Virus record (IMG/VR): IMGVR_UViG_3300031951_000001
Coordinates: 62,001 to 126,000 of that record
Reading direction: 5' to 3' (one strand)
Length of the DNA stretch: 64,000 nt
Below, piece after piece: positions 4,050 to 60,545 of the stretch. How positions within the stretch are numbered: the first letter of the stretch is position 1; every line of letters begins with the position of its first letter. The notes beneath the pieces were generated by a model. It saw only the letters and a program-made list of their open reading frames with translations, did not search any database and was not told the origin of the DNA. A program made the translations under genes and the position numbers.

Positions 4050-4868
4050 TTACGCGACGTTAATCTCAAAGTTATCAACTTTGGCAACCGCGTTAGCTCT
4101 ATGTGAGCTAGTACCTCCTCCCGCATTTATATCGGCAAAATATTCCGCAGCCTCTTTTTTGTCTGTAAAGTTTGGGAAAGTTGATGCGGATTTACCTTTA
4201 GTAAAAAATGCGATTGCGATTTTTGCTGCGATTTCAGGGTCATTAACTAAATCTGGATTTTTAACTAACTCATCACCCATACCAATCATTCTACTATATT
4301 TTTCATAATTTTTAATACCGGTTAGTTGGTTGAACCCTCTACCTCTATACGTGAAACCATCGTCTCCACCTTGATTACCAACTGTTTTAGCGTAAACTAC
4401 ATTGAAAAATTTTCTCATATCACTTTTTAATGCGTTTAATTCACTATCACTATATCCGGCCACTCTTTTACCGAATATTTTTCTAATTCTACTATTGGCC
4501 GTGGTTGCGTATGAAACCTCACTTTTAGGTTTGAAATTACATTCCTTATTAATAACTGATAAAATACCTACTTGAGTATAGGGGTTTGTTATACCCGCCT
4601 CATTCATTTTATCTATTAAAAAATTTATATTTTTTTGTTGTTCAGAATCAAAATTACCAACAATTTTCACATCACCGTTTACAGGTGAACTTTTAGTGGT
4701 GCCTGTTTCCGATGGTTTTTCTTCTGATGAGCTTGGGGTTTTGGAGGGTTTCTCAAACATTTTCTTTATTGATAAAGCAAGTGCCTTTTCAATAAAAGAT
4801 TGCTCATTTATATTGTGTAGTTTTTTTATATGACTTTTTTCTTCTTCGGTAATTAATAATTTTCTCAT
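4050..4868 (-). CDS. glycoside hydrolase family 19 (chitinase/lysozyme-like) lytic enzyme
   Basis: DGFTYRGRGFNQLTGIKNY and NPDLV..P..AA motifs; N-terminal leader MRKLLITEEEKSHIKKLH. Confidence 0.8.
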   Translation of the reverse strand: MRKLLITEEEKSHIKKLHNINEQSFIEKALALSIKKMFEKPSKTPSSSEEKPSETGTTKSSPVNGDVKIVGNFDSEQQKNINFLIDKMNEAGITNPYTQVGILSVINKECNFKPKSEVSYATTANSRIRKIFGKRVAGYSDSELNALKSDMRKFFNVVYAKTVGNQGGDDGFTYRGRGFNQLTGIKNYEKYSRMIGMGDELVKNPDLVNDPEIAAKIAIAFFTKGKSASTFPNFTDKKEAAEYFADINAGGGTSSHRANAVAKVDNFEINVA

Positions 4869-33969: not shown

Positions 33970-34105
33970 ACTGTATGTGGTTTTCTGTTTAAGCTTTTAT
34001 GGTTTCATTATAATATCTGAAATCATAAGTAGAAAACTACCTAACACAGGTTATAGTAAATGGTGGAGAAAGTATTTTATGGATGAGTGTGAGAAGTGTG
34101 ACTAA
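33950..34105 (+). CDS. small membrane protein (51 aa)
   Basis: MLNTLIKLYVVFCLSFYGFIII..KWWRKYF; followed by a terminator hairpin. Confidence 0.45.
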   Translation: MLNTLIKLYVVFCLSFYGFIIISEIISRKLPNTGYSKWWRKYFMDECEKCD

Positions 34106-34157
34106 ATGTCACACTTTTTTTTTATTTCATAATATTTATAGATATATTTTTTGCTTA

Positions 34158-34493
34158 ATGGAACAACAAATTTATACTGTGGTAATCACATTGTTAACTG
34201 TTTTAACTTCTACCGCTGCGTGGAGGTATTATGAAAAAAGGATGGTGTTAAAGGCTAAACAAGAACAGGATGTACATAAAGATAGCGAAATGTATCGAGA
34301 TGACCTGAGAGAAAGAGTTGTTAAGTTGGAGACATTGTTAAATGAGTCGGCTAAAGAAAAAGATAAAATGAGAGAAAACATTGTATTATTGACTGCTCAA
34401 GTATCCAAATTAGAAGTGGAAGTTGAATTTTTAAGAAGGGATAACGAAAATCTTCGAGCCGAAAATCATTCATTAAGACAAAGATTGGTATAA
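34158..34493 (+). CDS. N-terminal TM plus coiled-coil protein (possibly lysis-related)
   Basis: Start reassigned to MEQQIYTVVITLLTVL; coiled coil; directly precedes the M23 gene. Confidence 0.65.
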   Translation: MEQQIYTVVITLLTVLTSTAAWRYYEKRMVLKAKQEQDVHKDSEMYRDDLRERVVKLETLLNESAKEKDKMRENIVLLTAQVSKLEVEVEFLRRDNENLRAENHSLRQRLV

Positions 34494-35215
34494 TGACAAA
34501 TTTTTCTTACATAACAAATACCTCTAAAGGTAGAATAACATCCCCTTTCGGTAATAGGGTACATCCTACATTAGGTAAGGTTAAAAAACATTCTGGATTA
34601 GATATTGCTCATCCAACAGGAACTGAAGTACTAGCAATGACCGATGGTGTTGTTATTCAAAGTGAAATGGCGAATAATGCTTGTGGTGGCACAATTGCTA
34701 TAGACCACGGAATGGTTGATGGAAAAAAACTTAAAACCAGATTTTGTCATAATAGTAAATTACTTAAAAAAGTAGGAGATAATGTTAAAAAGGGTGAGGT
34801 AATTGCAATTTCTGGAGGGGGTAAAAGTGATGTTGGTAGAGGTCGCTCAACAGGACCTCATATCCATTTTGAAGTGTATGAAAACGGTCAAACTGTAAAT
34901 CCAAAACCGTATTATGAGGGTTCATCAGTGGGATTAAAATCTGATAGTGAAACTACAACCGATTCAGATACCACAACTGAACCAACCAAACCAATTACCT
35001 CACAATCGAGTGATGAAGATATTGAAAATTTTATAAAATATTTGATTGGTGGTAAGGACATGACAATCGCTCAAAAAAACAAAGCTTTGATGCCACTTGT
35101 TAAACAATTATCACCAGGATTGGCGGATATTTTAAGTTCAGCAATACAAAATGAATCAACGGAATATGTTACAAAATTGACCGAAGATATAAAAAGAATA
35201 AAAAATTTACTTTAA
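34493..35215 (+). CDS. M23 family peptidase
   Basis: ITSPFG.R.HP, HSGLD, STGPHIHFEV, VNP; ends LTEDIKRIKNLL. Confidence 0.9.
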   Translation: MTNFSYITNTSKGRITSPFGNRVHPTLGKVKKHSGLDIAHPTGTEVLAMTDGVVIQSEMANNACGGTIAIDHGMVDGKKLKTRFCHNSKLLKKVGDNVKKGEVIAISGGGKSDVGRGRSTGPHIHFEVYENGQTVNPKPYYEGSSVGLKSDSETTTDSDTTTEPTKPITSQSSDEDIENFIKYLIGGKDMTIAQKNKALMPLVKQLSPGLADILSSAIQNESTEYVTKLTEDIKRIKNLL

Positions 35216-35216
35216 T

Positions 35217-35786: not shown

Positions 35787-35800
35787 AAAAAATTTCAGAT

Positions 35801-36074: not shown

Positions 36075-36079
36075 ATTAG

Positions 36080-36925: not shown

Positions 36926-36941
36926 TCGTTTAATCTTACAT

Positions 36942-37014
36942 CGCAACTTAGAGCAGAGGCCAGCTCGTCAGGCTCATAACCTGAAGGTCGGAGGTTCGAA
37001 TCCTTCAGTTGCAA
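36942..37014 (+). tRNA. initiator-type tRNA-fMet(CAT)
   Basis: C1-A72 mismatch; anticodon arm TCAGG-CTCATAA-CCTGA; T-arm GGAGG-TTCGAAT-CCTTC. Confidence 0.85.
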
Positions 37015-37099
37015 CAAATTTACAGGTGAGCTTGTCTCACCTTTTTTTATTCTTATATTTCTTATACCATTCAGGTATAAACAATAATTCTTTTATTTT

Positions 37100-37399: not shown

Positions 37400-37430
37400 A
37401 AAGAAAACCCCTCCGAGTGAGGGGTTTTTT
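37397..37430 (+). repeat. 34-bp direct repeat, copy 1 (stop codon plus bidirectional terminator)
   Basis: TAAAAAGAAAACCCCTCCGAGTGAGGGGTTTTTT, identical to 38517-38550. Confidence 0.9.
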
Positions 37431-37505
37431 ATTATTAAAATATTACAAAAAAGTAATACACATTTGAGGTTTTCACCTTATTTATAGATATAATCCCACC
37501 CAATT

Positions 37506-38519: not shown

Positions 38520-38550
38520 AAAGAAAACCCCTCCGAGTGAGGGGTTTTTT
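38517..38550 (+). repeat. 34-bp direct repeat, copy 2 (terminator between the GT and tmRNA)
   Basis: Identical to 37397-37430. Confidence 0.9.
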
Positions 38551-38557
38551 CTTACGG

Positions 38558-38932
38558 TGGAGGTACGGGGAGTCGAACCCCTTCCTACTCATCTTAACTA
38601 CTAAGCCCTACATGTTTAGGTCAACATCGCTTCTCAATGTTCCGAAATATTGGTTTTTGAGCTCTCAAAACCACAAACGAGTTGTGTTTCTTTTCGGGTA
38701 GAAACCACACCACAGTACGAGCTTCTGTTCCAAGGTTGTATGCTTACCGACCCGTTTTGTATCCCAATCCTAGATTAGGCTACTGAAATGTTCTCTTCAG
38801 TACGGATAAGACCAACTGCAGAGAGTTTGTTGATAACGTTGCCGTTTATCGTGTGAACCAGTTTTACAAGGTTAGTTCAGCCTCGACATGCTCCGAGTAA
38901 TTAACTATGCTAGTCAATTCCAAGTTACCCCC
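38558..38932 (-). ncRNA. ssrA: tmRNA
   Basis: 5' GGGGGTAACTTGGAATTGAC; 3' GGTTCGACTCCCCGTACCTCCA with G3-U70; tag frame 38843-38775 after ATAAAC. Confidence 0.93.
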
Positions 38933-39005
38933 ATATTTCAAATAACGTTCTACAAATATATACATAGTTTATTGGTAATCCAAGTATTTATATAAAAAGT
39001 TTTTA

Positions 39006-40067
39006 ATGGAATTATATCAGGCACTTGTACAATTTCGTGATTCGGATATTGACCCTATGTTTGTTAGGGAGGCGGATGATGACAATGTTGTTAAAATAAT
39101 CAAAGTTGCTAAAAATAGAGGTAAATCTTTGGTTGAGCTACGTTTTACCGAAGAGGAGTTTATGAAAATTTTTATTGACGATAAAAATGAATACGGTAAT
39201 AATAGTGCGGTAATTGCCGCTTGTGAAAATAAATATTCAAGTAATTTATTTGTCGACTCATATTGGGGTAGGGACGAAATGAAAGGAGGTTATCCATTTC
39301 ATTATTTTAATGAAGAAAATATGCAGTTATTAAGAAATATTTTAAAATTAGTTAATCCATCACTCGCTAATTTTAACCTTGGTAATACAGAAGACGCTGG
39401 TGCTTTTTTTTCTAGAGTTTTTGAAAGGGAATCTGATGATATTGCGGATTACTATGCGGATTATTATGATGAGGCGCTTAAGGCCGGGTGTTTGGATTAT
39501 GTGAATCGAAAATTATGTGGAAAGTTTGACAATTATGGTATTATGGAAAAAAGTTGTCGAGAACATTATGTAACAACAGTAGATTTTTTAATTGATTTTT
39601 GGGACTCTACAGGAACACCACATGATGAAAGTATTATAGAAATGTTTAAAAATTTTGTATCTAAAAATAATTTGGAGTTTGATGAAGATTTATGGGAGGA
39701 CTATTGGGATTATTGGAGCAGTAATAATTGGGATGGAGATTCATTTAATAAAGAGGTTGATAGAATTTTGGTTAGATTATATGATAGATTAACCGAAGAC
39801 ATGGAACCCGAAGAATTGGAAAACATGAAAAAGGTCTATGTTATGTTGGATAAATTAAATGTTCAAATTGGAAATTGGAGTACATTCCCAAAACAAAAAA
39901 CATTTGGTAAAACGGACCCAAACAAGATTTTTCAAGTTTCTGATTTTGAAGATGGTAAAATAAAAGTTCTTTATAAAAAAGATAAAGGTAACTTTTACGG
40001 TGTGGAAAAAATGTTAATTCCTATAGAAGATTTTGCCAATTTCTTATATCACCCAGAATTATTCTAA
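39006..40067 (+). CDS. hypothetical protein
   Basis: 353 aa, rich in acidic and aromatic residues; TATTTAT upstream. Confidence 0.7.
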   Translation: MELYQALVQFRDSDIDPMFVREADDDNVVKIIKVAKNRGKSLVELRFTEEEFMKIFIDDKNEYGNNSAVIAACENKYSSNLFVDSYWGRDEMKGGYPFHYFNEENMQLLRNILKLVNPSLANFNLGNTEDAGAFFSRVFERESDDIADYYADYYDEALKAGCLDYVNRKLCGKFDNYGIMEKSCREHYVTTVDFLIDFWDSTGTPHDESIIEMFKNFVSKNNLEFDEDLWEDYWDYWSSNNWDGDSFNKEVDRILVRLYDRLTEDMEPEELENMKKVYVMLDKLNVQIGNWSTFPKQKTFGKTDPNKIFQVSDFEDGKIKVLYKKDKGNFYGVEKMLIPIEDFANFLYHPELF

Positions 40068-40109
40068 ATAAATTTTATTTATAAACAATCTTGACCTATC
40101 TTTGTCATT

Positions 40110-40934
40110 ATGACAAGAGACCTAAATTTACTTAAATCAGTTTTATCTGTGCCAACCAAAACTTATCAAGAGGAATTGATGATTGAGTTTTTGATTGATT
40201 GGTTAGAACGAAACAACATTGAATATTCGGTAGACGAACATTGGAATGTTTATGCGACCAAAGGTGAAGTTGATGAGCATTCTTACTATCCTTGCGTTGT
40301 TGCTCACACAGATACCGTACATAACATTGATGTAATCAATATACGTGAGGAGGAATTAAAGAACGCACAAGGTCAGATTCGACCATCTTTGAAGGCGTAT
40401 AATGACTTTGGAAAACCAACTGGTATTGGTGGTGATAATAAGTGTGGAGTTTTTGCTTGTTTGGAATTGTTAAAAGAACTTCCCGTATTAAAGGCGGCAT
40501 TTTTTGTATCAGAAGAAACAGGTTGTCACGGCTCAAGAAAGGCGGACCCAAATTTCTTTGAAAACGTAGGATACGCAATTCAATTCGATGCTCCATTCAA
40601 TTGGATGGTCACTGAATACAGCATGGGAGTTAAATTGTTTGATAAGTCAGACGATTTCTTCAAGAAATGTGATGAAGTCCTGAATGAATCATTTGAAGGA
40701 CGACAAAAATATGGGTCACACCCATACACCGATGTATATGCCTTGAGAAGCAAGTTTGATTTTTCTTGTATCAATATCTCAATCGGATATTATGATTATC
40801 ACACACCTGAAGAATATGTTGTAATCGAAGATGTATTCAGTGGAATTGATGCTGGTAAAAAAATGATTGAAAAATTGGGTAACAAAAAACACAAGGCCTC
40901 AATTGTAAAAGAAAAACAATTTTTGCTTTTTTAG
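40110..40934 (+). CDS. M20/M28-clan zinc peptidase-like protein
   Basis: VAHTDTVH, GGDNKCG, SEETGC, QFD, GYYDYHT.EE. Confidence 0.8.
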   Translation: MTRDLNLLKSVLSVPTKTYQEELMIEFLIDWLERNNIEYSVDEHWNVYATKGEVDEHSYYPCVVAHTDTVHNIDVINIREEELKNAQGQIRPSLKAYNDFGKPTGIGGDNKCGVFACLELLKELPVLKAAFFVSEETGCHGSRKADPNFFENVGYAIQFDAPFNWMVTEYSMGVKLFDKSDDFFKKCDEVLNESFEGRQKYGSHPYTDVYALRSKFDFSCINISIGYYDYHTPEEYVVIEDVFSGIDAGKKMIEKLGNKKHKASIVKEKQFLLF

Positions 40935-40957
40935 GATATTTATTAAAAAAAAATATC

Positions 40958-41347
40958 ATGGCAAAAGTTATTAAACTCACAGAAGCGGATTTAGAAAATA
41001 TTGTAAGAAAAGTAATAGAGGAACAAGAAACCCAAGAAGGTGTTTTTGACCCTTTGGTTAATGCGGCTCAAGGTCTAAAAGGCGTTTGGAGAGGAGAAGG
41101 ATATGACTACTTCAAATATTTGAGCTCATTGAGAGGTTTAACTCGTAAGTTAAAAAAACTTGATGCTCCGAATGTTAAAATAATGACTCAATTAACCGAT
41201 TTGAAAAATAAGGTTACCGTTTCAAAAATGCCAACCGATAAAAAACAAAATCTTATAAATACAATAGATAAAGCGATAGCTCATTTTAACGCCTATTCCG
41301 GATTGATTAATACAATAGAACAGTTAGCATCACAAAAATTAGCATAA
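40958..41347 (+). CDS. hypothetical protein with IKLTEADL leader
   Basis: MAKVIKLTEADLENIVRKVIEEQ. Confidence 0.7.
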   Translation: MAKVIKLTEADLENIVRKVIEEQETQEGVFDPLVNAAQGLKGVWRGEGYDYFKYLSSLRGLTRKLKKLDAPNVKIMTQLTDLKNKVTVSKMPTDKKQNLINTIDKAIAHFNAYSGLINTIEQLASQKLA

Positions 41348-41358
41348 AAAAAGGGGTC

Positions 41359-43389
41359 TTATGACCCCTTCTTCTTTCTTACCTTTTTAGTCTCGATAAT
41401 TTTGACATTACCTTCTTCCGCGACTAACTCATATTCCTTTTCTTCGGATATGTTTCCTTTTAATACTTCTTCAGAAATATAATCTTCTATTTTATCTTGG
41501 ATTGCCCTTTTAAGTGGACGAGCTCCATATGTTTCATCAAAACCAACTTCAGATATTAAATCGATAATTGAATCCGTGAAATTAATTTGATATTTCAAAC
41601 CACTTAATCTTTTAGATAATTTATTCAATTCAATTTTAACAATCTCGGCAATTTGTTCTTTCTTGAGATTATTGAAGACAATTATTTCATCGATTCGGTT
41701 AAGGAATTCAGGTGCGAAGAATTTCTTCAATTCTTTTTTCAATATATCCCTTTTGTATTCTTCTTCAATGTACGTATTTGTTCCAGATTTAAATCCAATC
41801 CCCGTACCAAAATCTTGTAACATTTTAGCCCCAATGTTTGAGGTCATAATAATGACACAATTCTTGAAGTTGATTTTTCTACCCAAACCATCGGTGATAT
41901 GACCATCATCCAATACTTGTAACAGTGCTGAAAAAATATCTTTGTTTGCCTTTTCAATTTCGTCAAACAATACCACAGAATAAGGTTTGTTTTTCACTTG
42001 TTCTGTAAGTTGTCCTCCTTCATCATAACCAACATATCCGGGAGGAGCTCCAATCAAACGAGAGATTGTATGTTTTTCTTGGAATTCAGACATATCAACT
42101 CTGATAAGGCTGTCCTCACTACCAAATATTTCTTTGGCAAGTTGTTTTGCGAGTAATGTTTTACCAACACCAGTAGAGCCCAAGAATATAAATGACCCAA
42201 TTGGTTTGTTAGGGTCCTTGATACCCAAACGATTTCTTCTGATTGATTTTGAAATTTTGATTACCGCTTCTTCTTGACCAATAACTTTTCCTGAAAGATT
42301 TTTCTCTAATTCTGTCAGTAATTTTGTTTCATCGGAGTTTAGTTTTGAGATTGGAATTTTGGTCATATTTGATACAACCTCATATACCAATTCTTCGGTC
42401 ACATCTCGTTTTGATAACAACAAATCACTCTCAAATTTCTTTTTCTCATCTTCAAGTTTTGATAGGATTTTCTTTTCCTTATCTCTCAAATTTGCGGCTT
42501 CCTCATAGTTTTGTTTTTTAACAACATCTAACTTTTGTTGTTTAATATCTTGAGCCTGCTTCTTCAAATCATCAATAATCTCCGGCATCTTAATCTCAAC
42601 TTGACTACGAGCACCAACTTCATCAATGATGTCAAAGGCTTTATCAGGAAACTCACGGTCTGTAATATATCGTTCGGCCAAATCAACGCACAAACTTAAA
42701 ATTGGGTCTGAATATGATACTTTGTGATATGTTTCATATTTGTCCTTTGTATTTTTTAGAATTTGAAGTGTTTCGGCCTTTGTTGCGGCATCCACGACAA
42801 CCTTTTGGAAACGACGCTCAAGGGCCCCATCCTTTTCAAAGTTTTTACGATATTCATCATTGGTTGTTGCCCCAACACATTGAATTTCTCCACGAGCAAG
42901 TGCCGGTTTGAAGATATTGGAAGCATCTAATGACCCCGACGAGTTACCGGCTCCTACAATAGTGTGAATTTCGTCAATGAAGACAATAATATTTGGATTA
43001 CTTTGTAACTCCTCAATAATCACCTTCATACGTTCTTCAAACTGACCACGATACTTTGTACCGGCAACAATTGAAGTCATATCTAAAGATACAATTCTTT
43101 TGTCCTGTAGATTTCTTGGGCAATCTCCTTCAAAGATTTTAATTGCTAATCCTTCGACAATTGCGGTTTTACCACAACCTGGCTCACCAATGATAATTGG
43201 ATTGTTCTTTTTTCTTCTTGAAAGAATTTGAGCTATCCTTGTTATTTCTCGTTCTCTACCGACCACAGGGTCAATTTTACCTTGTTCTGCAAGTTTAATT
43301 AAATCCCTACTAAAATTATCTAGTACAGGGGTACCACTATCACTAGTTTGTTTTGATTTTTTTCCATCATTATCCGCAGATTCTATCAT
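41359..43389 (-). CDS. ClpC/ClpB-family AAA+ ATPase lacking the Clp N-domain
   Basis: Walker A GEPGCGKT and GSTGVGKT; FIDEIH; UVR-like YEEAANLRD; GAPPGYVGY; GARPL. Confidence 0.93.
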   Translation of the reverse strand: MIESADNDGKKSKQTSDSGTPVLDNFSRDLIKLAEQGKIDPVVGREREITRIAQILSRRKKNNPIIIGEPGCGKTAIVEGLAIKIFEGDCPRNLQDKRIVSLDMTSIVAGTKYRGQFEERMKVIIEELQSNPNIIVFIDEIHTIVGAGNSSGSLDASNIFKPALARGEIQCVGATTNDEYRKNFEKDGALERRFQKVVVDAATKAETLQILKNTKDKYETYHKVSYSDPILSLCVDLAERYITDREFPDKAFDIIDEVGARSQVEIKMPEIIDDLKKQAQDIKQQKLDVVKKQNYEEAANLRDKEKKILSKLEDEKKKFESDLLLSKRDVTEELVYEVVSNMTKIPISKLNSDETKLLTELEKNLSGKVIGQEEAVIKISKSIRRNRLGIKDPNKPIGSFIFLGSTGVGKTLLAKQLAKEIFGSEDSLIRVDMSEFQEKHTISRLIGAPPGYVGYDEGGQLTEQVKNKPYSVVLFDEIEKANKDIFSALLQVLDDGHITDGLGRKINFKNCVIIMTSNIGAKMLQDFGTGIGFKSGTNTYIEEEYKRDILKKELKKFFAPEFLNRIDEIIVFNNLKKEQIAEIVKIELNKLSKRLSGLKYQINFTDSIIDLISEVGFDETYGARPLKRAIQDKIEDYISEEVLKGNISEEKEYELVAEEGNVKIIETKKVRKKKGS

Positions 43390-43436
43390 AACTGTTTTTT
43401 TTCTAATAATAACCATTATTTTTTAAAAAAAAAGTT

Positions 43437-43679
43437 ATGGCAATACTCAAAGAAGAAATTATTGGTACAAAGATTATCAACGAGATTCAGTCAAGTAATA
43501 TTAAGAAGACCGAATATGATACTGAAACTAAAAATTTATTGGTGACATTCAATAATGGAGCAATATACGAATATCAGGAAGTACCTCACCAACTTTATAC
43601 TCAATTTAGGATGAGCGAGTCACAAGGTAAGTTTTTTAGTGGAAAAATTGCAAAGGCGTTTAAATACAAAAAATTCTAA
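43437..43679 (+). CDS. KTSC domain protein
   Basis: SSNI..YD..L.VTFNNGAIYEYQEVP..SQGKFF. Confidence 0.85.
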   Translation: MAILKEEIIGTKIINEIQSSNIKKTEYDTETKNLLVTFNNGAIYEYQEVPHQLYTQFRMSESQGKFFSGKIAKAFKYKKF

Positions 43680-43709: not shown

Positions 43710-45923
43710 ATGAGTAATTTAAAAAAGATTTTATCAAGTTTTAAGGTTAGAGAATCTTTAAATCCTAAAATTTGGAAAAAAATTGATGGTACGGTTAAAA
43801 TGAATCCAGAAGTTAGGGCAGCCCTTTTGGATATTGCTAATGATTTTATAGAGTACCTTAAAGTTGAAATTGTGGTTACGGATGTAATCATGACGGGGTC
43901 TTTGGCTAATTTTAATTGGTCAAGTTTCTCTGATATTGATTTACACATAGTTGCTGATTTCAGTCAATTTCCTGAAGAACAATTGGACCTTTACAAAGAA
44001 CTTTTTAATCTAAAAAAAACTTTATACAACGACAAACATGATATAACTATTTTTGGTTATGACGTTGAGTTATATGTTCAGAACGAAACCGAATCTCACT
44101 TTAGTAGTGGAGTTTATTCCGTTTTATTTGATGAGTGGTCAAACAAACCAAAAAAAGAAAATGTAAAAATTGATACATCATTGATTAAAACAAAAACAAA
44201 TCAATGGATGGATATTATCGATGGAGTTATTGAGAATGTATCTGACGAACCGATTGATAAGGCAAAACAAATCATCAAAAAATATAAAGACAAACTTAAA
44301 AAATATAGAACTTGCGGTCTTGAAAAACAGGGTGAATATTCTGATGAAAATCTAGTCTTTAAGGCTTTAAGAAGAAATGGGTATATTGAAAAATTACACA
44401 GTTTTGAAGACAAACTTATCGACAAAACTTACACTCTAAAAGAGGCTTCCACATCGATTGGAGGACCATTCAAAACAGATATTGAGAATGGTCCATCAAA
44501 TCACTCCAAAAGAGCATTTGGTAATTGGCAGTCAGATAACGCTTGGGACATATTTGCCCCTCCTGGTAGTGTGGTAAATTCTTACACTGAAGGTAAAGTG
44601 ACTAAAATAAGAAATACTAATAAAAGGTCAGGAAAAGTTTTCGGAACCCAAGTTAGTATTAAAGGCACTGGAGAATATCCTGATATATTTTACACTCACT
44701 TAAAGAATGTAAAACTTAAACCTGGTGATACAGTAAGATTAGGTGATTATATTGGTGAAGTCACAGAATGGTGTAAGGACGAATCATGTAAGGAAATGCA
44801 TGGAGGAACTCACGTACATTTAGGACTTCCAAAAGGAAGACATTTAAGAGAGTTACTTACTAATTCTGATAAAATATTTACGGGAAGCGAGTCTTCATCA
44901 CCATCGAAGGAAGATTCCACCGGACTAGAAATAACACCATCAAAAGAATTATCTGGAACTGAGGAAGTAAATTTTGAAAATTTTGTAGATAAGTTATCTC
45001 AACTGAAAAATTTAATCAAACCTCTAAAAAACCTAAAATCTGAGGGGTCATCGATACCATTTGATTCAAACGTTGAAACATTACAAACCGCTTTACAAAT
45101 TTTAGGTTTTTCACTGCCAAAATGGGGTGTGGATGGTAAGTTTGGTAATGAAACAGAAGCGGCTGTTAAAAAATATCAACAGTCCATTGGGTTAGAAGAA
45201 ACAGGAATAATATCACCATATGATATTGAAAAATTGGTTTCTTTGGTATCGACTACAATAGAAAAGAATCCAGATGCGGTTGGTGATGTACAAAAAACTA
45301 AGGTGGAAACTATGCCTGATGGGCCAAAACCGAATGAAATGTCACCTTCTGAAGTATCATCTACTTCAGATAATGAGTATGCGATAATTAGACCTAATGG
45401 ATACAAAGGAAATAGAGTTCACGTATTATTTGGAGGTGCTCACACTTCAGGTTATTCCCCAAATAGTGCTAAACCACAAAATATTAGAAAATATATTGGT
45501 GTAATGACACCTTATGCAAATAATATTATTATTGTTGTAACTCATCACCAAAACACTTTGGCAAATGTTAGACAATATGTTAAAGAAAAATTTGGTGGAA
45601 TTGTTACGTCTATCGCCGGATTTTCACAAGGAGGCAAGGAAGCTTGGGAACATGCTGACGACAGTACTTTGAGTTTGGTTGGTTTGATTGACCCATCAAC
45701 TTATGAGACAGGTTTAACTTTTGGTTCAAATACTATTCTTTATTGTGACCCTAAAAATTGGGGAACTTCAGGTTTTTATGGTCAAACTAGAAAAAGACTT
45801 GAATGGTATTGTGCGAACAAAAATCAATATGCTGGGCGAGTAGTATGCTTCAATAAAGGAGGTACTCACATGAATTTCGAGATATTAAAATCTTTTTACA
45901 GTCAATACGGAGGTAAGATGTAA
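43710..45923 (+). CDS. multidomain fusion: nucleotidyltransferase + M23-like + PG-binding + alpha/beta hydrolase
   Basis: GSLANFNWSSFSDIDLH; FYTHL..THVHLG; LQTALQILG..VDGKFGNETEAAVKKYQ; AGFSQGG. Confidence 0.75.
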   Translation: MSNLKKILSSFKVRESLNPKIWKKIDGTVKMNPEVRAALLDIANDFIEYLKVEIVVTDVIMTGSLANFNWSSFSDIDLHIVADFSQFPEEQLDLYKELFNLKKTLYNDKHDITIFGYDVELYVQNETESHFSSGVYSVLFDEWSNKPKKENVKIDTSLIKTKTNQWMDIIDGVIENVSDEPIDKAKQIIKKYKDKLKKYRTCGLEKQGEYSDENLVFKALRRNGYIEKLHSFEDKLIDKTYTLKEASTSIGGPFKTDIENGPSNHSKRAFGNWQSDNAWDIFAPPGSVVNSYTEGKVTKIRNTNKRSGKVFGTQVSIKGTGEYPDIFYTHLKNVKLKPGDTVRLGDYIGEVTEWCKDESCKEMHGGTHVHLGLPKGRHLRELLTNSDKIFTGSESSSPSKEDSTGLEITPSKELSGTEEVNFENFVDKLSQLKNLIKPLKNLKSEGSSIPFDSNVETLQTALQILGFSLPKWGVDGKFGNETEAAVKKYQQSIGLEETGIISPYDIEKLVSLVSTTIEKNPDAVGDVQKTKVETMPDGPKPNEMSPSEVSSTSDNEYAIIRPNGYKGNRVHVLFGGAHTSGYSPNSAKPQNIRKYIGVMTPYANNIIIVVTHHQNTLANVRQYVKEKFGGIVTSIAGFSQGGKEAWEHADDSTLSLVGLIDPSTYETGLTFGSNTILYCDPKNWGTSGFYGQTRKRLEWYCANKNQYAGRVVCFNKGGTHMNFEILKSFYSQYGGKM

Positions 45924-45980: not shown

Positions 45981-47222
45981 ATGGGAAAATTAAAGCCTAT
46001 TGGAAGTGAAAAACTTCAGGGTATGGACAAAATCAATCGTATGATTGAGATTGCTAGATACAAAGAAAACATACCAAATCCAATCAATGAAGATGCTTCT
46101 GTTGAGTACAAAAAAGTTTTACCTGACGGACATACTTACCGAATTGATAAGGAGAAGAATGGTTATGTAATCGTTAAAGGACTTAATGAGTCTGAAATGG
46201 ATTATATTGAACCAATGAAAAATAGAAAATATTATTCTTCATACTCGCAAGCATTCAAGAGATTGAACTTAATCACCAAAGAAGTTAATAGTTTGGTGGG
46301 TAACGAAAAAAATGTTTCATTGTTCAATGAAGGTGATGAGAAGAAGGATAAAACAAAATATTTCCTGAAAATGGAACAAGCTCCTCCCACCGCGGCTCCC
46401 GCACCGGCACCTGCTCCGGCACCTGCTCCGGCGCCTGCGGAAGTACCGGCTGAAGAACCAGCTCCTGAAATGCCAGAGGAACCAATGGAACCTGAAATGG
46501 ATGCGGAGACTGAAATGGGTGATGAACAAGATGAAGAGATTGTAACTTTCAAAACCATTCAGAAATTAACAGGTAAGTTGGCTCAAAAAATTAGAACACT
46601 TGCGGCTGACGAGGAAAACCCAATGTCATCAAAAGACATTAAGTATGTAATTAATTCTGTTTTATCAGCATTTGATTTGAATTTATTGGATGAAGAAGAC
46701 AGAGATGAAATCATGGGTAAATTCGAAGGTGAAGAAATGGCAGGTGATGAGATGGGAATGGAAGATATGGGTGATATGGGTGATGAAGAAATGCCTGCGG
46801 ATGAAATGGGGGCTGAAGAAATACCTGCGGAAATGATGGAGATGTTTGATGAATATGAATCAGAAGCTCCTGAAGAACCAAGAATGGCTAAAATCAAAGG
46901 TCTTGATGACAAACATTCGTTTGGGGTTGAGGACATGATTGAAGGTTTGTTTAGTGAGTCGAAAGTTGACCAAATCCTGAAAAAATATTTCAATGTAAGT
47001 GAAACTGAAAAAGTAATCACTGAACAAAAGAAAGATAGAAAAAAAGAAATGATTTGGAAAATTAATCAGTTGAGTGAAAATGTGGAACAAGAAGTTATCT
47101 CACGTAAATTGATTAACAAATTTTCTGACGCTAAATTACTTGGCAGAACAAAGAAAAAAGATTTAGTTTTTGAAATAAATGAATCAAAAGTTAGAGTAAC
47201 CCCAAAAGGTGAAATTCTATGA
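45981..47222 (+). CDS. acidic hypothetical protein with Pro-Ala linker
   Basis: 413 aa; (PA)n and E/M/D-rich tracts; several INE/LNE/ITE/LSE motifs. Confidence 0.7.
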   Translation: MGKLKPIGSEKLQGMDKINRMIEIARYKENIPNPINEDASVEYKKVLPDGHTYRIDKEKNGYVIVKGLNESEMDYIEPMKNRKYYSSYSQAFKRLNLITKEVNSLVGNEKNVSLFNEGDEKKDKTKYFLKMEQAPPTAAPAPAPAPAPAPAPAEVPAEEPAPEMPEEPMEPEMDAETEMGDEQDEEIVTFKTIQKLTGKLAQKIRTLAADEENPMSSKDIKYVINSVLSAFDLNLLDEEDRDEIMGKFEGEEMAGDEMGMEDMGDMGDEEMPADEMGAEEIPAEMMEMFDEYESEAPEEPRMAKIKGLDDKHSFGVEDMIEGLFSESKVDQILKKYFNVSETEKVITEQKKDRKKEMIWKINQLSENVEQEVISRKLINKFSDAKLLGRTKKKDLVFEINESKVRVTPKGEIL

Positions 47223-47629
47223 GTTATTTGATTTATGTAAATGAGTTAGGTCCAAACTATAAGGGAGACAACATTTATGAGTTTATTTTCTCGGATAGTT
47301 TAGACGGAGTTTGGGGTGACTCTTGGGAATCAAAACCGTCAAACGGTTACCCATCACCACCGGACTTGGAATTTATAAAAAAGGTAGGAGTTCTAAAAAA
47401 CGATACAATTAGTATGTCAGTTATTCAGAACTCCGATTTTTTTTCTATGATAGACGCAATTGACGGAGTTATTGCCCTATCTTGGGAGAACGATAGTGAA
47501 GAAGTTAATTTCGATACGAAAAAAAGATTAGTTTTTCGTTTCGGAGAAAAAGAAGAAACGGTTAAAAATAAACTTTACGAACGAGATTTAGTATTAGAGT
47601 TCGAAAAAAAAGTGGTTTATGAACATTGA
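47219..47629 (+). CDS. hypothetical protein
   Basis: 136 aa, coupled to its neighbours. Confidence 0.7.
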   Translation: MSYLIYVNELGPNYKGDNIYEFIFSDSLDGVWGDSWESKPSNGYPSPPDLEFIKKVGVLKNDTISMSVIQNSDFFSMIDAIDGVIALSWENDSEEVNFDTKKRLVFRFGEKEETVKNKLYERDLVLEFEKKVVYEH

Positions 47630-48578
47630 AAAAAAGATATTAAGATTATTGGAACATGGGTTCAATACATCTACATTAGCAGACCTGAAACCAAAGCAGA
47701 TTGAAGCGTTATACAATAGATTGGTTGAGGCTAAAGAAGAAAATAAAGAACAGTCAACACCCCAAAATACAACCGCAACAAGTAAAACAATCACATCATA
47801 TGAAGTTAAACCAAATAGTAAAACTATGGTTAATGGACTTGAGGTTGATACTACGGGAGGTAAAACCAGAATAACTCCATTAAAAGAAATAGATGACACT
47901 GAAACCGAGGATATTGCTTTAGCGGTAAGTGAGAAAGACCCTGATTTAGGTTTAGCGATGAGTGAAGACTTAAAAGAAAAATTTGAATCCAAGAAACAAC
48001 AGAAATATTTTTTTGCTAAATGTGGTGATGGTAAAACTAAAGAACAAAAAAAATGGTGTAAAATGGCAAAAGAATTCGCCGATTCTACCAAAAACTTTAG
48101 TAAATTACCTGAAAAAAAAGATGAAACAAATGAAGATTTTTCCTTCAAAAATTATTTAGAAAAGGTTGGAAGTACTATAGCGGGAAATATTGCTAAAGAG
48201 GTTCCAAACTCATTAAGACCAACATTCGAAGGTAAATTGGAAGAAAGTATTATGAACATGGTAAACAAACACATAACACCAAAAATGACCAAAAAAGATT
48301 TTATAAAAACAATCACTGAAGCGGAAAGGGAAGTTGAGACACCTGTTAAACCAGATGTTAAACCTGAAAGACCAAGACCACAAACTCCGTATCAACCGAA
48401 GCATAAACCAGCCCCAAAGGCGGGTGAGAAAGAAGTAGAAACCCCTGTCAAACCTGACGTTAAACCTGAAAGACCAAGACCGGCAACTCCATATCAACCA
48501 AAACATAAACCAGCCCCAAAAGCGGAGGATATCCCACAGTGGATAACATTTGACGCTATTGGTATTAATTTGAAGTAA
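47619..48578 (+). CDS. hypothetical protein with duplicated Pro/Lys-rich tail
   Basis: FESKKQQKYFFAKC; 34-aa tandem repeat. Confidence 0.7.
   Translation: MNIEKKILRLLEHGFNTSTLADLKPKQIEALYNRLVEAKEENKEQSTPQNTTATSKTITSYEVKPNSKTMVNGLEVDTTGGKTRITPLKEIDDTETEDIALAVSEKDPDLGLAMSEDLKEKFESKKQQKYFFAKCGDGKTKEQKKWCKMAKEFADSTKNFSKLPEKKDETNEDFSFKNYLEKVGSTIAGNIAKEVPNSLRPTFEGKLEESIMNMVNKHITPKMTKKDFIKTITEAEREVETPVKPDVKPERPRPQTPYQPKHKPAPKAGEKEVETPVKPDVKPERPRPATPYQPKHKPAPKAEDIPQWITFDAIGINLK
48324..48527 (+). repeat. 102-bp in-frame tandem duplication
   Basis: E(R/K)EVETPVKPDVKPERPRP(Q/A)TPYQPKHKPAPKA twice, with synonymous divergence. Confidence 0.85.
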
Positions 48579-55085: not shown

Positions 55086-55811
55086 ATGAATATGGAAGTT
55101 TTGAAACCCGGACAATCAGGCAAAGGCATTCTAATCGAATACGATGCTGGATACTTATCACCAACTGAAAAACGTAATGTTGATTTGATACATGAGTCCA
55201 AAGGAATGTTGGACCATTCAAAACCATTTGAATTCTACGCAGTACTTCAGAAATTTAACACCCCAAACAGAAACGGAAGAATATATCCTGAAAAAGTATT
55301 AAAGAGAGAAGCCGACAATTATAAGAAAATGATTAACAAGGGTATTGCTTTATCCGAACTTAATCACCCTGAGTCATCACTTGTTGACTTGGACAGAGTT
55401 TCTCATTCAATTAGTGATATATGGTGGGAAGGTCCTGTTCTTATGGGTAAATTAAAATTATTAACTTCACCAGGTTTTCATGAGAGAGGTATTGTATCAA
55501 CCAAAGGAGACCAAGCGGCAAATCTTTTAAGACAAGGTGTTACACTTGGTATATCATCTCGTGGTGTAGGGTCGCTTAAAAAAATTGGGGAACAAAACGA
55601 AGTACAGGATGACTTTGAGTTGATTTGTTTTGACCTTGTATGGTCTCCATCCACTCCTGGTGCTTATCTTTTCACTGAACCTGATGACAGATTTAAGTTT
55701 GAAGAAAACTTGGATGAGGAGAAAAAAATGAAAGCTGAAAGAGAATTTGGTGGCCCAACCGACAAATCGCTTGACTTAATGAAGAAATTGAACGATTATT
55801 TGGGTTACTAA
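55086..55811 (+). CDS. prohead core protease (T4 gp21-like)
   Basis: NRNGRIYP, ELNHP, VSH, GISSRGVGS, FDLV..PSTPGA. Confidence 0.92.
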   Translation: MNMEVLKPGQSGKGILIEYDAGYLSPTEKRNVDLIHESKGMLDHSKPFEFYAVLQKFNTPNRNGRIYPEKVLKREADNYKKMINKGIALSELNHPESSLVDLDRVSHSISDIWWEGPVLMGKLKLLTSPGFHERGIVSTKGDQAANLLRQGVTLGISSRGVGSLKKIGEQNEVQDDFELICFDLVWSPSTPGAYLFTEPDDRFKFEENLDEEKKMKAEREFGGPTDKSLDLMKKLNDYLGY

Positions 55812-58691: not shown

Positions 58692-60545
58692 ATGGGAGCA
58701 TTATTAGAATCAGGTCTTGTTGGTAACATCGGTCTTAAGCACCTTAAAGTTATCAAAGAAGATACTATCAACAAATGGGACAAATTAGGGTTCCTCGAAG
58801 GTCTTAAGGGCCACCTAAAAGAAAATGTTGCGCAGTTATATGAAAACCAAGCGTCACATTTGATTAACGAAGCAACTTCTGACGGTTCTTCAGGTTCATT
58901 TGAAACTGTTGTATTCCCAATCGTTAGACGTGTATTCTCTAAGTTACTTGCTAACGACATTGTATCTGTACAAGCTATGAACTTACCAATTGGTAAATTG
59001 TTCTACTTCGTACCGAAGATTCAAGGTTATAACAATGGTGTTGGTGGTTCCTCAACCGGACCATTTGACTCAAGTTCAGGTCAGCACTACGCACCTGTAG
59101 GTTCACCTGGTAATTACCCTGGTGACCCAAATTCTGGTTACACTTTGTCAAATGGTTCATACAACGGTACTTATGCTAAAAACCTTTATGATTTATTCTA
59201 TGAAGGCACTGAACCTGGATTGAACCCAGCAGGTCTTTTTGACTATTCAAAAGGTCGTTGGTCGGCAGTAACCACATCAGCTACAGTTGTTGCTTGGTCT
59301 AATGGTACACTAGAACCCGCTCAGTCAGTTTACATCGGTAACAACATAAGAAAAGTTATTATCAGAGTTGGTGGTTTCACTAACACTGGTGTAGGTAAAT
59401 TAATAGCACCTGATGGTAATGAGATTGATACTGAAACTTTCTTGGCTAGTTTGATTGTTTATACTGGTACAGGTATTAGCGCGTCAACAACACCATGTGC
59501 GATTTCTACAGGACCACTTTTGTATAGAGTTGTAACTCAACAGTATGGTAAGGGTATTGTTAGTCCTACCTACACTCCAACAACAACTACTTGGCCTACC
59601 GATGGTGGTGGTGGTACTTATGATAAAGTTTGTGACCAGACAGGTTATATCTATTTAGAAGTTGATTTGTCATGTCCTACATGTCCAACATGTGGTAGTG
59701 ACACTATCGATGGTTACACAGGTGCAACTATCACTAACATTTTCTCAGGTTCAGCATTTAACGTAGCTTGGAGACGTTATGAAGAACTCGAATTCGAAGA
59801 TAAAATCGGTGAAGTTTCTTTCGACCTTGAGTCAGTAACAGTTTCTGTGACTGAAAGAAAGTTGAGAGCTCAGTGGTCACCAGAACTTGCTCAAGACGTT
59901 GCGGCATTCCACAACATCGACGCTGAAGCCGAATTGACAGCTTTATTGTCAGAACAAGTTGCGGCTGAAATTGACCGTGAAATTCTTCGTGACCTTCGTA
60001 AAGGAGCGGCTTGGAATTTACGTTGGGATTACAACGGATGGAGAAGAGTTGCTAATACAACTTCTTACACTCAAAAAGACTGGAACCAAACTTTGATTAC
60101 AGCAATCAACCAATTATCTGCTCAAATTCACAAGTCAACACTTCGTGGTGGAGCAAACTGGATTGTTGTTTCTTCCGAAGTTTCAGCTATCTTTGATGAC
60201 TTGGAATATTTCCACGTTTCAAATGCGTCACCTGAACAAGACCAATACAACATGGGTATTGAGAGAGTGGGTACACTTGCTGGTCGTTACCAAGTATATC
60301 GTGACCCATACTTCCCATCAAACCAAGTATTGATTGGTCATAAAGGTACATCGTTACTTGATACTGGTTACATTTACGCACCGTATGTACCACTTCAATT
60401 AACTCCAACTATGTACAACCCATTCAACTTTACACCTATCAAGGGTATCATGACACGTTACGCGAAGAAAATGGTTAATAACCGTTTCTACGGACGTATC
60501 ACAGTTGATGGTGTACGTACATTTGACTTACAAGAACTTAGATAA
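58692..60545 (+). CDS. major capsid protein (T4 gp23-like)
   Basis: FPIVRRVF, VSVQAMNLPIG.LFY, RKLRAQWSPELAQD, EIDREI, YAPYVPL, GIMTRYA; probable cleavage LINE|A. Confidence 0.96.
   Translation: MGALLESGLVGNIGLKHLKVIKEDTINKWDKLGFLEGLKGHLKENVAQLYENQASHLINEATSDGSSGSFETVVFPIVRRVFSKLLANDIVSVQAMNLPIGKLFYFVPKIQGYNNGVGGSSTGPFDSSSGQHYAPVGSPGNYPGDPNSGYTLSNGSYNGTYAKNLYDLFYEGTEPGLNPAGLFDYSKGRWSAVTTSATVVAWSNGTLEPAQSVYIGNNIRKVIIRVGGFTNTGVGKLIAPDGNEIDTETFLASLIVYTGTGISASTTPCAISTGPLLYRVVTQQYGKGIVSPTYTPTTTTWPTDGGGGTYDKVCDQTGYIYLEVDLSCPTCPTCGSDTIDGYTGATITNIFSGSAFNVAWRRYEELEFEDKIGEVSFDLESVTVSVTERKLRAQWSPELAQDVAAFHNIDAEAELTALLSEQVAAEIDREILRDLRKGAAWNLRWDYNGWRRVANTTSYTQKDWNQTLITAINQLSAQIHKSTLRGGANWIVVSSEVSAIFDDLEYFHVSNASPEQDQYNMGIERVGTLAGRYQVYRDPYFPSNQVLIGHKGTSLLDTGYIYAPYVPLQLTPTMYNPFNFTPIKGIMTRYAKKMVNNRFYGRITVDGVRTFDLQELR

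What the first reader, a model, noticed from the sequence alone, without database searches (positions are those of the whole stretch)
43710..45923. Nucleotidyltransferase fused to cell-wall and hydrolase domains: a possible polyprotein
Seen: a Pol-beta-type GS..DxD domain, then TLKE|A, an M23-like domain, a PG-binding domain and a GxSxG hydrolase, joined by S/T/E/P-rich linkers. Cytoplasmic and wall-acting activities in one chain are odd. Inference: the head protease cuts at LKE to release separate injected enzymes.
Basis: partly seen in the sequence, partly recalled or inferred. Interest (0 to 1): 0.6.

Follow-up and report, generated by a model that had tools for sequence, protein, structure and literature searches.

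The report
Phage nucleotidyltransferase fused to wall-lysin cassette
One gene of a 322-kb T4-like jumbo phage joins a conserved phage nucleotidyltransferase to a swappable set of cell-wall-degrading domains, at a spot that looks like a cutting site for the phage's head protease, so the product may be split into two enzymes.

Summary
Window 43710-45923 (+) is one 737-aa ORF with four modules: a Pol-beta-type NTase (1-241), a divergent M23/LytM domain (246-~395), PG_binding_1 (453-503) and a small alpha/beta-hydrolase serine esterase (556-737).

The NTase is a core gene of this phage lineage. In syntenic relatives the same slot (ClpB-like, KTSC, NTase, four unknown genes, TerL, portal) holds either a 244-259-aa NTase alone or an NTase with different tails. 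On the NTase tree the tail was gained, lost or swapped at least 31 times.

The only linker [LI]xE site is T-L-K-E245|A.
- 99 of 100 fused homologues keep it.
- It lies 27 residues before the M23 metal motif, as in about 40 of 53 NTase-less M23 proteins. There it ends a short leader, or only M-I-N-E.
- The genome encodes a T4-type S77 prohead protease, and its capsid protein has L-I-N-E60|A.

Cleavage into two products, not four, is therefore plausible (about 0.5). Packaging and injection are untested. The target has no N-terminal targeting leader. The NTase's own C-terminus partly explains the motif. A separate likely lysis cassette exists at 34083-35215.

The parts
43710..45923 (+). Whole gene, 737 aa: NTase, divergent M23, PG_binding_1 and esterase
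   Evidence: ORF list and translation. 100% match in the window's own 322,372-bp virus record.
43710..44432 (+). Pol-beta-superfamily NTase domain (aa 1-241): an NTase core plus a helical lobe. Catalytic residues G63, S64, D75, D77, E120.
   Evidence: Pfam and PHROG matches. Invariant columns. AF2 model pLDDT 89.6. Foldseek: ANT(9) at E 6e-4, then CD-NTases and TENT5. Profile against PDB: DrrA AMPylase domain at E 0.0016.
44433..44447 (+). Junction T242-L-K-E245|A246: a candidate T4-type prohead-protease site and the fusion breakpoint
   Evidence: It is the only [LI]xE in an interdomain linker, and E245 lies 27 residues before the W-x-SDNAWD anchor.
44445..44894 (+). Divergent M23/LytM domain (aa 246-395): D276 in place of the first His ligand, with D280, H330, H368 and H370 kept
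   Evidence: Pfam 37-40 bits. Alignment with canonical M23 domains. PDB sequence hit to M23 peptidase 5kqb at E 3e-5.
45066..45218 (+). PG_binding_1 domain (aa 453-503)
   Evidence: Pfam E 3.9e-13, 49.8 bits. Endolysin PHROGs and endolysin PG-binding domains of cultured phages match here.
45375..45920 (+). Small alpha/beta-hydrolase serine esterase (aa 556-737): S639, D661, H720; Cys 679, 701, 713, with the 'WYC' (C701) and 'V.C' (C713) cysteines conserved across relatives
   Evidence: AF2 pLDDT 95.5. Foldseek and VIA matches. Only 55 clusters among 1.8 billion representatives. Alignment A3.
55086..55811 (+). T4-type prohead protease (Peptidase_S77), the enzyme that would cut at L-x-E
   Evidence: the genome search with PF03420: 87.3 bits, above the cut-off.
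58692..60545 (+). gp23-like major capsid protein, with L-I-N-E60|A-T-S in its N-terminal region
   Evidence: PF07068 at 215 bits. Site list.
4050..4868 (-). The phage's own GH19 lysin behind a 22-aa leader that ends I-N-E. It shows the leader-plus-wall-hydrolase design in this genome.
   Evidence: Leader HMM E 1e-5. Pfam GH19 28.2 bits against a cut-off of 25.5. PHROG 181 endolysin at E 2e-27.
34083..35215 (+). Likely separate lysis cassette: a 136-aa protein with one TM helix and a coiled coil, then a canonical 240-aa M23 whose C-terminus carries an L-T-E plus 'RIK' tag

Best explanation
This is a mosaic gene. A core NTase of this distant T4-like jumbo-phage lineage is normally a 244-259-aa stand-alone enzyme encoded between a KTSC gene and the head and packaging genes. 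Here it has acquired, in frame at its 3' end, a mobile envelope-lysin cassette: a divergent M23 endopeptidase, a peptidoglycan-binding domain and a serine esterase.

The two halves are functionally independent. The NTase needs cytoplasmic NTPs, and its substrate is unknown (its fold is of the ANT / DrrA-AMPylase kind). The cassette acts on the cell envelope.

The join coincides with L-K-E245|A, the consensus of T4-type prohead proteases. The same [LI]xE boundary precedes the M23 module in relatives whatever lies upstream. My best reading is that the precursor is split there by the phage's S77 protease into the NTase and a 492-aa lysin.

Shown here: the domain identities, the mosaic history, the conserved junction and the presence of the protease.
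Inferred: cleavage (about 0.5), presence of the precursor in the prohead and delivery of the lysin at entry (about 0.3), and the esterase's substrate (an O-acyl group on peptidoglycan or polysaccharide, or a lipid ester).

The confidence given, 0.5, is for the whole statement including cleavage. The mosaic part alone is about 0.85.
For: Domains.

Same slot, with or without a tail:
- NTase alone in P0126's contig and in L008/L009.
- NTase with other tails in L019 and L020.

Architecture census of 239 homologues: NTase alone 114; with M23d-PGB-unknown C-terminal domain 56; with GH19 19; NTase-M23d 13; with esterase 10; also canonical M23 or VanY variants.

On a 206-sequence NTase tree there are at least 12 changes between alone and fused, and at least 31 architecture changes.

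Junction:
- 99 of 100 fused forms have [LI]xE, and 83 of the 90 scored at P1' then have S, A, G or T. Stand-alone forms have E 47, stop 32, Q 25.
- P0018 and P0019 are the same M23d-PGB-esterase cassette without the NTase, behind a 26-aa leader ending L-x-E.
- 48 of 53 NTase-less M23d proteins have [LIV]xE upstream of the metal motif, mostly exactly 27 residues upstream as in the target.
- 31 of 50 esterase-domain proteins have [LI]xE at residues 14-34, against 4.3 +/- 1.9 in controls. Six have a signal or TM N-terminus instead.

Protease and its likely substrates in this genome. The two-site leader pattern occurs in 27 of 347 genes against 4.1 +/- 1.8 in controls, and the set includes the capsid protein.
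Against: The D-K-x-L-S-[LI]-K(E) motif is also the natural C-terminus of stand-alone NTases, many of which stop right there. Part of its conservation therefore belongs to the NTase fold.

[LI]xE at a fixed distance from the M23 metal site, even in proteins that begin M-I-N-E, could instead be the first structural element of the M23d domain.

The target has no N-terminal leader, and the leader HMM does not match the NTase C-terminus. T4-type proteases act inside proheads, so a route into the prohead is missing.

The test on phylogenetically independent pairs had no power: 5 supported pairs.

Head-packaged proteins of myophages are thought to enter the cytoplasm, where a wall hydrolase would be of no use (my own knowledge).

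There is no proteomic or expression evidence.
Confidence: 0.5

Rival explanations
1. The protein stays intact and works as a bifunctional or accessory lysin. The NTase half does its job in the cytoplasm during infection, and the wall-acting half becomes useful only when the membrane is breached at lysis. On this reading the L-K-E junction is a relic of recombination between the NTase's C-terminal L-S-L-K-E and the similar end of a lysin leader.
For: The motif is present in stand-alone NTases. Some M23d proteins begin M-I-N-E, which fits a structural role for the motif. The target has no targeting leader. PG_binding_1 plus a hydrolase is a typical endolysin design, and the PG-binding part matches endolysins of cultured phages.
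Against: P3 and P1 are held to [LI] and E in 99 of 100 fused forms but drift to M, Q or a stop in stand-alone forms. Breakpoints always fall directly after the E, for M23d, canonical M23 and VanY tails alike. A separate TM/coiled-coil gene plus canonical M23, and a leader-GH19 lysin, already exist in this genome. No holin or spanin gene lies beside the target.
Confidence: 0.35
2. The NTase domain acts as a large pro-domain or regulator that keeps the M23 and esterase modules inactive or cytoplasmic until they are released. It would replace the short leader of NTase-less relatives, without any capsid packaging.
For: Leader, signal peptide and NTase are alternative N-terminal elements in front of the same modules. 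Latent M23 enzymes with occluding N-terminal regions are known (my own knowledge of LytM).
Against: The NTase catalytic residues are invariant in fused and free forms alike, so it is an enzyme and not a mere pro-domain. The same NTase fold is also fused to non-wall tails in BFVD, for example an 812-aa 'amidoligase' protein.
Confidence: 0.1
3. The whole chain is a structural virion-associated peptidoglycan hydrolase of the tail or baseplate, with the NTase fold as an adaptor.
For: The gene lies on the strand and at the edge of the head and packaging block. M23 domains occur in tape-measure and minor head protein PHROGs.
Against: The NTase stands alone in many syntenic relatives and sits among replication genes in cyanophages. 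Its catalytic motifs are intact. No tail genes are adjacent.
Confidence: 0.05

Closest known systems
T4 internal proteins and Alt: capsid-targeting sequence plus gp21 cleavage
   Same: A T4-type S77 protease is present. The junction fits the L/I-x-E consensus. Relatives of the tail carry 4-26-residue N-terminal leaders ending in that site, like the 10-20-residue T4 targeting sequences (PMC5694885, PMC3012670). Alt is an injected host-modifying enzyme that is processed at both ends (PMC5694885).
   Different: The target has no N-terminal leader. The candidate site is internal, between two enzymes. The cargo would be wall hydrolases, which are not known among T4 head proteins. Nothing has been shown experimentally.
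Cyanopodophage A4 gp28 and T7 gp16: capsid-packaged ejection proteins with wall-degrading domains
   Same: An M23-type domain inside a head-packaged protein. The M23 region of the target matches the 9k2v 'internal protein' at E 0.012. gp28 carries lytic transglycosylase and M23 domains (PMC12002296).
   Different: Those are podophages, whose ejection proteins build a trans-envelope channel. This phage has T4-type head genes. The sequence match is weak.
Mycobacteriophage LysA and LysB modular lysins
   Same: Shuffled peptidase (including M23), PG_binding_1 and a separate alpha/beta-hydrolase esterase that cuts an envelope ester (PMC3314691, PMC6116114). The esterase model also aligns with Ag85/MPT51 at Z about 12.
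   Different: Here everything is in one chain behind an NTase. There is no Pfam cutinase or LysB match. The host is unknown; nothing here points to a mycolate envelope, and no relative turned up among cultured mycobacteriophages.
ANT-type adenylyltransferases and the DrrA/SidM AMPylase domain
   Same: A two-lobed Pol-beta NTase of about 240 aa. Foldseek best hit is ANT(9) 6xz0 at E 6e-4. The profile hits DrrA 3nku at E 0.0016 across the GS and DxD region.
   Different: TM-scores are only about 0.28 and there is no sequence-level membership. The family is exclusively viral in the ESM Atlas and BFVD. The substrate is unknown.

Membership tests
Pol-beta superfamily nucleotidyltransferase (Pfam NTP_transf_2) | hG[GS] motif, [DE]x[DE] motif and a third carboxylate on a later strand | tested here: met
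   G63, S64, D75, D77 and E120 are invariant in 44 sequences. Pfam 22.2-23.1 bits against a cut-off of 21.
Pol-beta superfamily nucleotidyltransferase (Pfam NTP_transf_2) | NTase core fold | tested here: met
   AF2 pLDDT 89.6. Foldseek hits are all NTases: ANT(9), CD-NTases, TENT5, MNT.
Aminoglycoside NTase (ANT) or DrrA-type AMPylase | Specific sequence or structural membership and a known acceptor substrate | tested here: inconclusive
   E 6e-4 with TM 0.28. E 0.0016 to DrrA. phmmer against PDB found nothing. The acceptor cannot be tested here.
Peptidase M23 (LytM) | Profile match above the curated threshold | tested here: met
   37.1-40.3 bits against a cut-off of 28.7.
Peptidase M23 (LytM) | HxxxD metal-binding motif | tested here: not met
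   The motif reads D276-N-A-W-D280. The His is replaced by Asp in the whole subfamily. Asp could still bind zinc, so activity is uncertain.
Peptidase M23 (LytM) | HxH motif and the catalytic His | tested here: met
   H368, H370 and H330 are invariant.
PG_binding_1 | Profile match above the curated threshold | tested here: met
   49.8 bits against a cut-off of 23.
Alpha/beta-hydrolase serine esterase | Fold, with a GxSxG nucleophile elbow and an Asp and His triad | tested here: met
   Z 14.4 over 172 residues at rmsd 2.9. Foldseek probability 1.0. G-F-S-x-G-G and G-L-I-D-P are invariant. The C-terminal His is present in most sequences but shifts in the alignment.
T4-type prohead-protease substrate or capsid cargo | The phage encodes an S77 protease | tested here: met
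   PF03420 at 87.3 bits, window 55086-55811.
T4-type prohead-protease substrate or capsid cargo | An exposed L/I-x-E site | tested here: met
   L243-K-E245 lies after the last NTase helix, in the low-confidence stretch.
T4-type prohead-protease substrate or capsid cargo | An N-terminal capsid-targeting leader | tested here: not met
   The N-terminus is part of the NTase fold (helix 2-10). There is no conserved [LI]xE near it. Leaders occur only in NTase-less relatives.
T4-type prohead-protease substrate or capsid cargo | Found cleaved in virions | not testable with these tools
   No cultured relative carries the tail, and no proteome is available.
Endolysin of a holin-endolysin cassette | Adjacent holin or spanin gene | tested here: not met
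   The neighbours are KTSC and an acidic 413-aa protein. A TM/coiled-coil gene plus a canonical M23 lies at 34083-35215 instead.

The most novel reading that the evidence does not exclude
This jumbo-phage lineage uses a portable, protease-excisable targeting tag. The tag is an amphipathic helix of the 'x-I-x-R-I-K-x-L-M' or 'L-T-E-S-D-L...' type. It can sit at either end of a protein and is always bounded by [LI]xE on the side of the mature protein. The tag would load dozens of cargo proteins, wall hydrolases included, into the prohead. In the NTase-lysin fusions, the NTase would take the place of the tag, the S77 protease would cut at L-K-E245, and a host-modifying NTase and a lysin would both be delivered at infection.
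Probability: 0.25. Interest if true: 0.8.

Novelty: new variant of a known kind. Interest (0 to 1): 0.6.

Why it matters
If the junction is a real maturation site, this would be a natural two-enzyme polyprotein processed by a T4-type head protease. It would also be evidence that such phages package wall-degrading enzymes.

The comparative pattern turns a guess into a bench test: look for one semi-specific peptide, or make one E-to-Q mutant. That pattern is the same [LI]xE boundary behind a 4-residue stub, a 21-26-residue leader or a 245-residue enzyme.

Independently of cleavage, three things are new or rare:
- an abundant, uncharacterised, virus-only NTase family;
- a rare esterase module, with 55 clusters among 1.8 billion representatives;
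- an M23 subfamily with an Asp in place of the first metal-binding His.

All three are candidates for enzyme discovery.

Tried and rejected
- Megablast of 10 kb around the gene against cultured phages found no match.
- tblastn of the tail against cultured phages matched only the PG-binding domain.
- A leader-bearing 129-aa protein had no match in cultured phages.
- phmmer of the NTase and of the esterase against PDB gave nothing useful.
- The VIA wide search with the NTase model was swamped by generic helical bundles matching residues 151-247 and was uninformative.
- NCBIfam and PADLOC gave nothing for the NTase or the esterase.
- The promoter and terminator scan did not exceed shuffled sequence.
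- The phylogenetically independent-pairs test of 'fused' against 'E at P1' had too few pairs.
- The leader HMM does not match the NTase C-terminal helix, so I dropped the idea that this helix is itself a leader.
- A double-glycine bacteriocin leader reading of '...N-I-G-G' was rejected because GG is not conserved in NTase-less M23d proteins.
- Searching the record behind L008 for the tail was not possible, because the record is not held.
- A literature search for the leader motifs and for an NTase-M23 fusion found nothing relevant.
- No GH24 lysozyme is present in the genome.

Tools not used, and limits kept:
- The reads tools were not used.
- Only genetic code 11 was used.
- The exhaustive protein search was used once, for the C-terminal domain, after Pfam and PDB had left it open.
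- Domains were searched apart from each other, as the operators advised.
Full report
OBSERVATION

Window 43710-45923 (+) is a single 737-aa ORF. It starts at ATG 43710, with an in-frame GTG one codon upstream. The window is bases 62001-126000 of a 322,372-bp IMG/VR virus record with about 34% G+C.

- NTase: residues 48-104 pass Pfam NTP_transf_2 (22.2-23.1 bits, cut-off 21), and PHROG 36119 covers 11-241 at E 4e-41.
- M23: residues 277-373 pass Peptidase_M23.
- PG-binding: residues 453-503 pass PG_binding_1.
- C-terminal third: it has no Pfam family. With an alignment of 33 relatives it folds at pLDDT 95.5 into an alpha/beta hydrolase. The nearest structures are CE1 feruloyl esterases, esterase D/FrmB, cutinase- and PETase-type enzymes and Ag85/MPT51 (VIA Z 14.4 over 172 residues; Foldseek E about 5e-6).

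Key residues:
- NTase: G63, S64, D75, D77, E120.
- Junction: T242-L-K-E245|A246.
- M23: D276, D280, H330, H368, H370.
- Esterase: S639, D661, H720.

THE NTASE

The NTase model has pLDDT 89.6 and shows a Pol-beta core plus a helical lobe. The last helix ends at residue 241, so T-L-K-E sits in the lower-confidence exit of the domain.

Its structural neighbours are weak: ANT(9) at E 6e-4 with TM 0.28, then CD-NTases, TENT5, ANT(6) and MNT. A profile of the family hits the DrrA/SidM AMPylase domain at E 0.0016. In the ESM Atlas and BFVD the family is purely viral. The catalytic residues are invariant in free and fused forms alike. I take it to be an active enzyme with an unknown acceptor.

THE M23 DOMAIN

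The M23 domain is a distinct subfamily. The first His of the canonical HxxxD motif is always Asp, and the other four canonical positions are invariant. Its catalytic competence is therefore uncertain.

THE GENOME

The genome encodes:
- a T4-type prohead protease (Peptidase_S77, window 55086-55811);
- a gp23-like capsid protein (58692-60545);
- a T4-type TerL (49959-51719).

Syntenic relatives have a T4-type portal protein directly after TerL. The matching 599-aa ORF here is 51785-53584; it was not itself scanned.

The nearest cultured capsid proteins come from Microcystis phage Mel-JY01, Flavobacterium phage immuto and Rhodothermus phage RM378, at 36-41% identity. No cultured phage carries the tail of the target.

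RELATIVES: THE NTASE ALONE OR WITH OTHER TAILS

Both states exist, and in quantity. The word search with the full protein found more than 630 relatives. The NTase alone found 3067, most of them 242-259-aa stand-alone proteins at 61-84% identity.

Among the 239 listed sequences the architectures are:
- NTase alone: 114
- NTase-M23d-PGB plus an unknown C-terminal domain: 56
- NTase-M23d-PGB-GH19: 19
- NTase-M23d: 13
- NTase-M23d-PGB-esterase (the target's type): 10
- NTase-M23d-PGB, some on short contigs: 8
- NTase with a canonical M23: 6
- NTase-M23d with a canonical M23: 4
- NTase-VanY-PGB-esterase: 3
- M23d-PGB-esterase without an NTase: 2

Synteny is strict. The order is an M20/M42-like peptidase, a ClpB-like ATPase on the minus strand, KTSC, the NTase with or without a tail, four unknown genes (about 420, 136, 320 and 445 aa), TerL and then the portal protein. 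This order holds whether the slot has the NTase alone or a fused form.

On a 206-sequence NTase tree at least 12 changes between alone and fused are needed, and at least 31 changes of architecture. The target's nearest neighbours include a stand-alone NTase, P0125. The tail is therefore an accessory cassette repeatedly added to, removed from or swapped on a core gene.

More distant phages carry the NTase alone: T4-like cyanophages (among replication genes), Maribacter phages and Lak megaphages.

THE JUNCTION

Evidence against a special meaning. Stand-alone NTases end with the same D-K-x-L-S-[LI]-K motif, often stopping right after the K, or continuing with E plus 3-8 residues, or ending in M-N-Q. 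The motif therefore belongs in part to the NTase.

Evidence for a special meaning.
- In 99 of 100 fused forms, P3 is L or I and P1 is E. Of the 90 forms my script scored at P1', 83 have S, A, G or T. In 106 stand-alone forms the P1 position is E in 47, a stop in 32 and Q in 25, and P3 can be M.
- The breakpoint falls directly after the E for M23d, canonical M23 and VanY tails alike.
- P0022 repeats D-K-K-L-S-L-K-E before a second, canonical M23 domain.
- The target has only four [LI]xE sites. The other three (350, 381, 497) lie inside folded domains.

The independent-pairs test had only 5 supported pairs, so the contrast between fused and free forms is suggestive, not proven.

THE TAIL WITHOUT THE NTASE

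P0018 and P0019 are the same M23d-PGB-esterase cassette at 62% identity. They start with a 26-aa charged amphipathic leader that ends in L-x-E directly before the same T-T-N-I-G-G start.

A search with the M23d domain alone found 58 short proteins. Of the 53 usable ones, 48 have [LIV]xE 22-45 residues before the W-x-SDNAWD anchor. By my count from the printed rows, about 40 have it at exactly 27 residues, the same distance as E245 in the target.

What lies upstream of that E varies:
- only M-I-N;
- a 21-residue '...I-x-R-I-K-x-x-M-G...' leader;
- a 22-residue 'M-K-K-I-I-R-L-T-E-S-D-L...' leader;
- in the target, a 245-residue enzyme.

Where the N-terminal stub is short, an 'R-I-K' tag often sits at the C-terminus instead. 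In 13 of 13 such cases it is preceded by [LIVM]xE.

Among 50 cluster representatives that carry the esterase domain, 31 have [LI]xE at residues 14-34, against 4.3 +/- 1.9 in controls (maximum 12 in 500 trials). Six have a hydrophobic signal or TM N-terminus instead. Together with a conserved Cys pair, this points to an extracytoplasmic site of action for the esterase.

THE SAME DESIGN IN THE TARGET'S OWN GENOME

Across 347 ORFs, [LI]xE is enriched 4.2-fold at residues 7-10 and 2.5-fold at residues 19-22. The two-site pattern occurs in 27 genes, against 4.1 +/- 1.8 at control positions. The set includes the capsid protein and an acidic 506-aa scaffold-like protein. Paralogous families inflate this count.

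Proteins with such tags include:
- a GH19 lysin (window 4050-4868, minus strand);
- a canonical M23 with the tag at its C-terminus (34493-35215) and its 189-aa neighbour.

The capsid protein has L-I-N-E60|A-T-S, close to where T4 gp23 loses its 65-residue propeptide (PMC9958956). That T4 gp21 cuts after L/I-x-E is my own knowledge. That T4 targeting sequences are 10-20-residue N-terminal propeptides, and that Alt is processed at both ends, is stated in PMC5694885. That T4 internal proteins are diverse except for the targeting sequence is stated in PMC3012670.

WEIGHING

The mosaic origin and the independence of the two halves are well supported (about 0.85).

Cleavage at E245 is about even odds.
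- For: the junction statistics, the fixed boundary behind unrelated upstream elements, the tags bounded by [LI]xE at either terminus, and the protease.
- Against: the NTase's own C-terminal motif; the possibility that [LI]xE is the first structural element of the M23d fold (M-I-N-E starts fit that); the lack of any leader on the target; and the requirement that a T4-type protease meets its substrates inside the prohead.

Packaging and injection are less likely still (about 0.3). A head-packaged M23 is documented for cyanopodophage A4 gp28 (PMC12002296), but not, to my knowledge, for T4-like myophages.

The target is probably not the main endolysin. A TM/coiled-coil gene overlapping a canonical M23 (34083-35215) and a leader-GH19 lysin exist elsewhere, and no holin-like gene flanks the target.

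One cut giving two products is plausible and now testable. Release of each domain as a separate enzyme is not supported, and injection is open.

NOVELTY

I found no paper that describes an NTase-M23 fusion or these leaders. JGI's automatic names already show both halves. I rate it a new variant of known kinds: a modular phage lysin and a T4-type protease-processed precursor.

The reads tools were not used. Only genetic code 11 was used.

Noticed in passing
window 4050-4868 (-), 17460-17981 (-), 18572-19006 (+), 40958-41347 (+); own genome G000 28683-42449 and others: A large set of genes starts with a roughly 22-residue amphipathic leader of the 'M-K-K-I-I-R-L-T-E-S-D-L...I-N-E' or '...I-x-R-I-K-x-L-M-G...E' type. 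It has [LI]xE at about residue 9 and about residue 22. 27 of 347 genes show it, against 4.1 expected, in front of unrelated domains. It resembles T4 capsid-targeting propeptides.
   Followed up: partly
window 34493-35215 and 35217-35786 (+): The canonical M23 protein and its 189-aa neighbour carry the 'R-I-K' tag at the C-terminus, each preceded by [LI]xE. The tag therefore works at either end of a protein.
   Followed up: partly
window 34083-34493 (+): A 136-aa protein with one N-terminal TM helix and a long coiled coil (PHROG 2658 'hol-like', E 4e-10). Its stop overlaps the start of the canonical M23. This is a likely lysis cassette.
   Followed up: partly
window 41359-43416 (-) and 40110-40934 (+): A full-length ClpB/ClpC-like double-AAA ATPase (PHROG 4871, E 8e-241) sits next to an M20/M42-like peptidase. 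The pair is conserved beside the KTSC-NTase pair in all relatives examined.
   Followed up: no
window 43437-43679 (+): An 80-aa KTSC-domain protein lies immediately upstream of the NTase in every syntenic relative. It may be a functional partner of the NTase.
   Followed up: no
window 45981-47222 and 47619-48578 (+): The 413-aa product is extremely acidic, with a (P-A)n run and several [LI]xE sites. The 319-aa product holds a duplicated unit of about 33 residues rich in P and K. Both lie between the target and TerL and may be head or scaffold proteins.
   Followed up: no
window 53604-54320 and 57143-58663 (+): The 238-aa and 506-aa products flanking the protease have 9 and 11 [LI]xE sites, mostly L-[KN]-E-[SN]. 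This is as expected for scaffold or core proteins that the protease shreds.
   Followed up: partly
relatives P0028, P0057 and others, C-terminal 140 aa; L019 8001-9944: The commonest tail ends in an unknown domain of about 140 aa with no Pfam match.
   Followed up: no
L008 1536-1973: A relative with a stand-alone NTase encodes SmpB, the tmRNA-binding protein, near this locus.
   Followed up: no
BFVD hits of the NTase model: The same NTase fold is fused to non-wall tails in other uncultured phages, for example an 812-aa 'amidoligase' protein and an 884-aa protein. The NTase is therefore a promiscuous N-terminal fusion partner.
   Followed up: no
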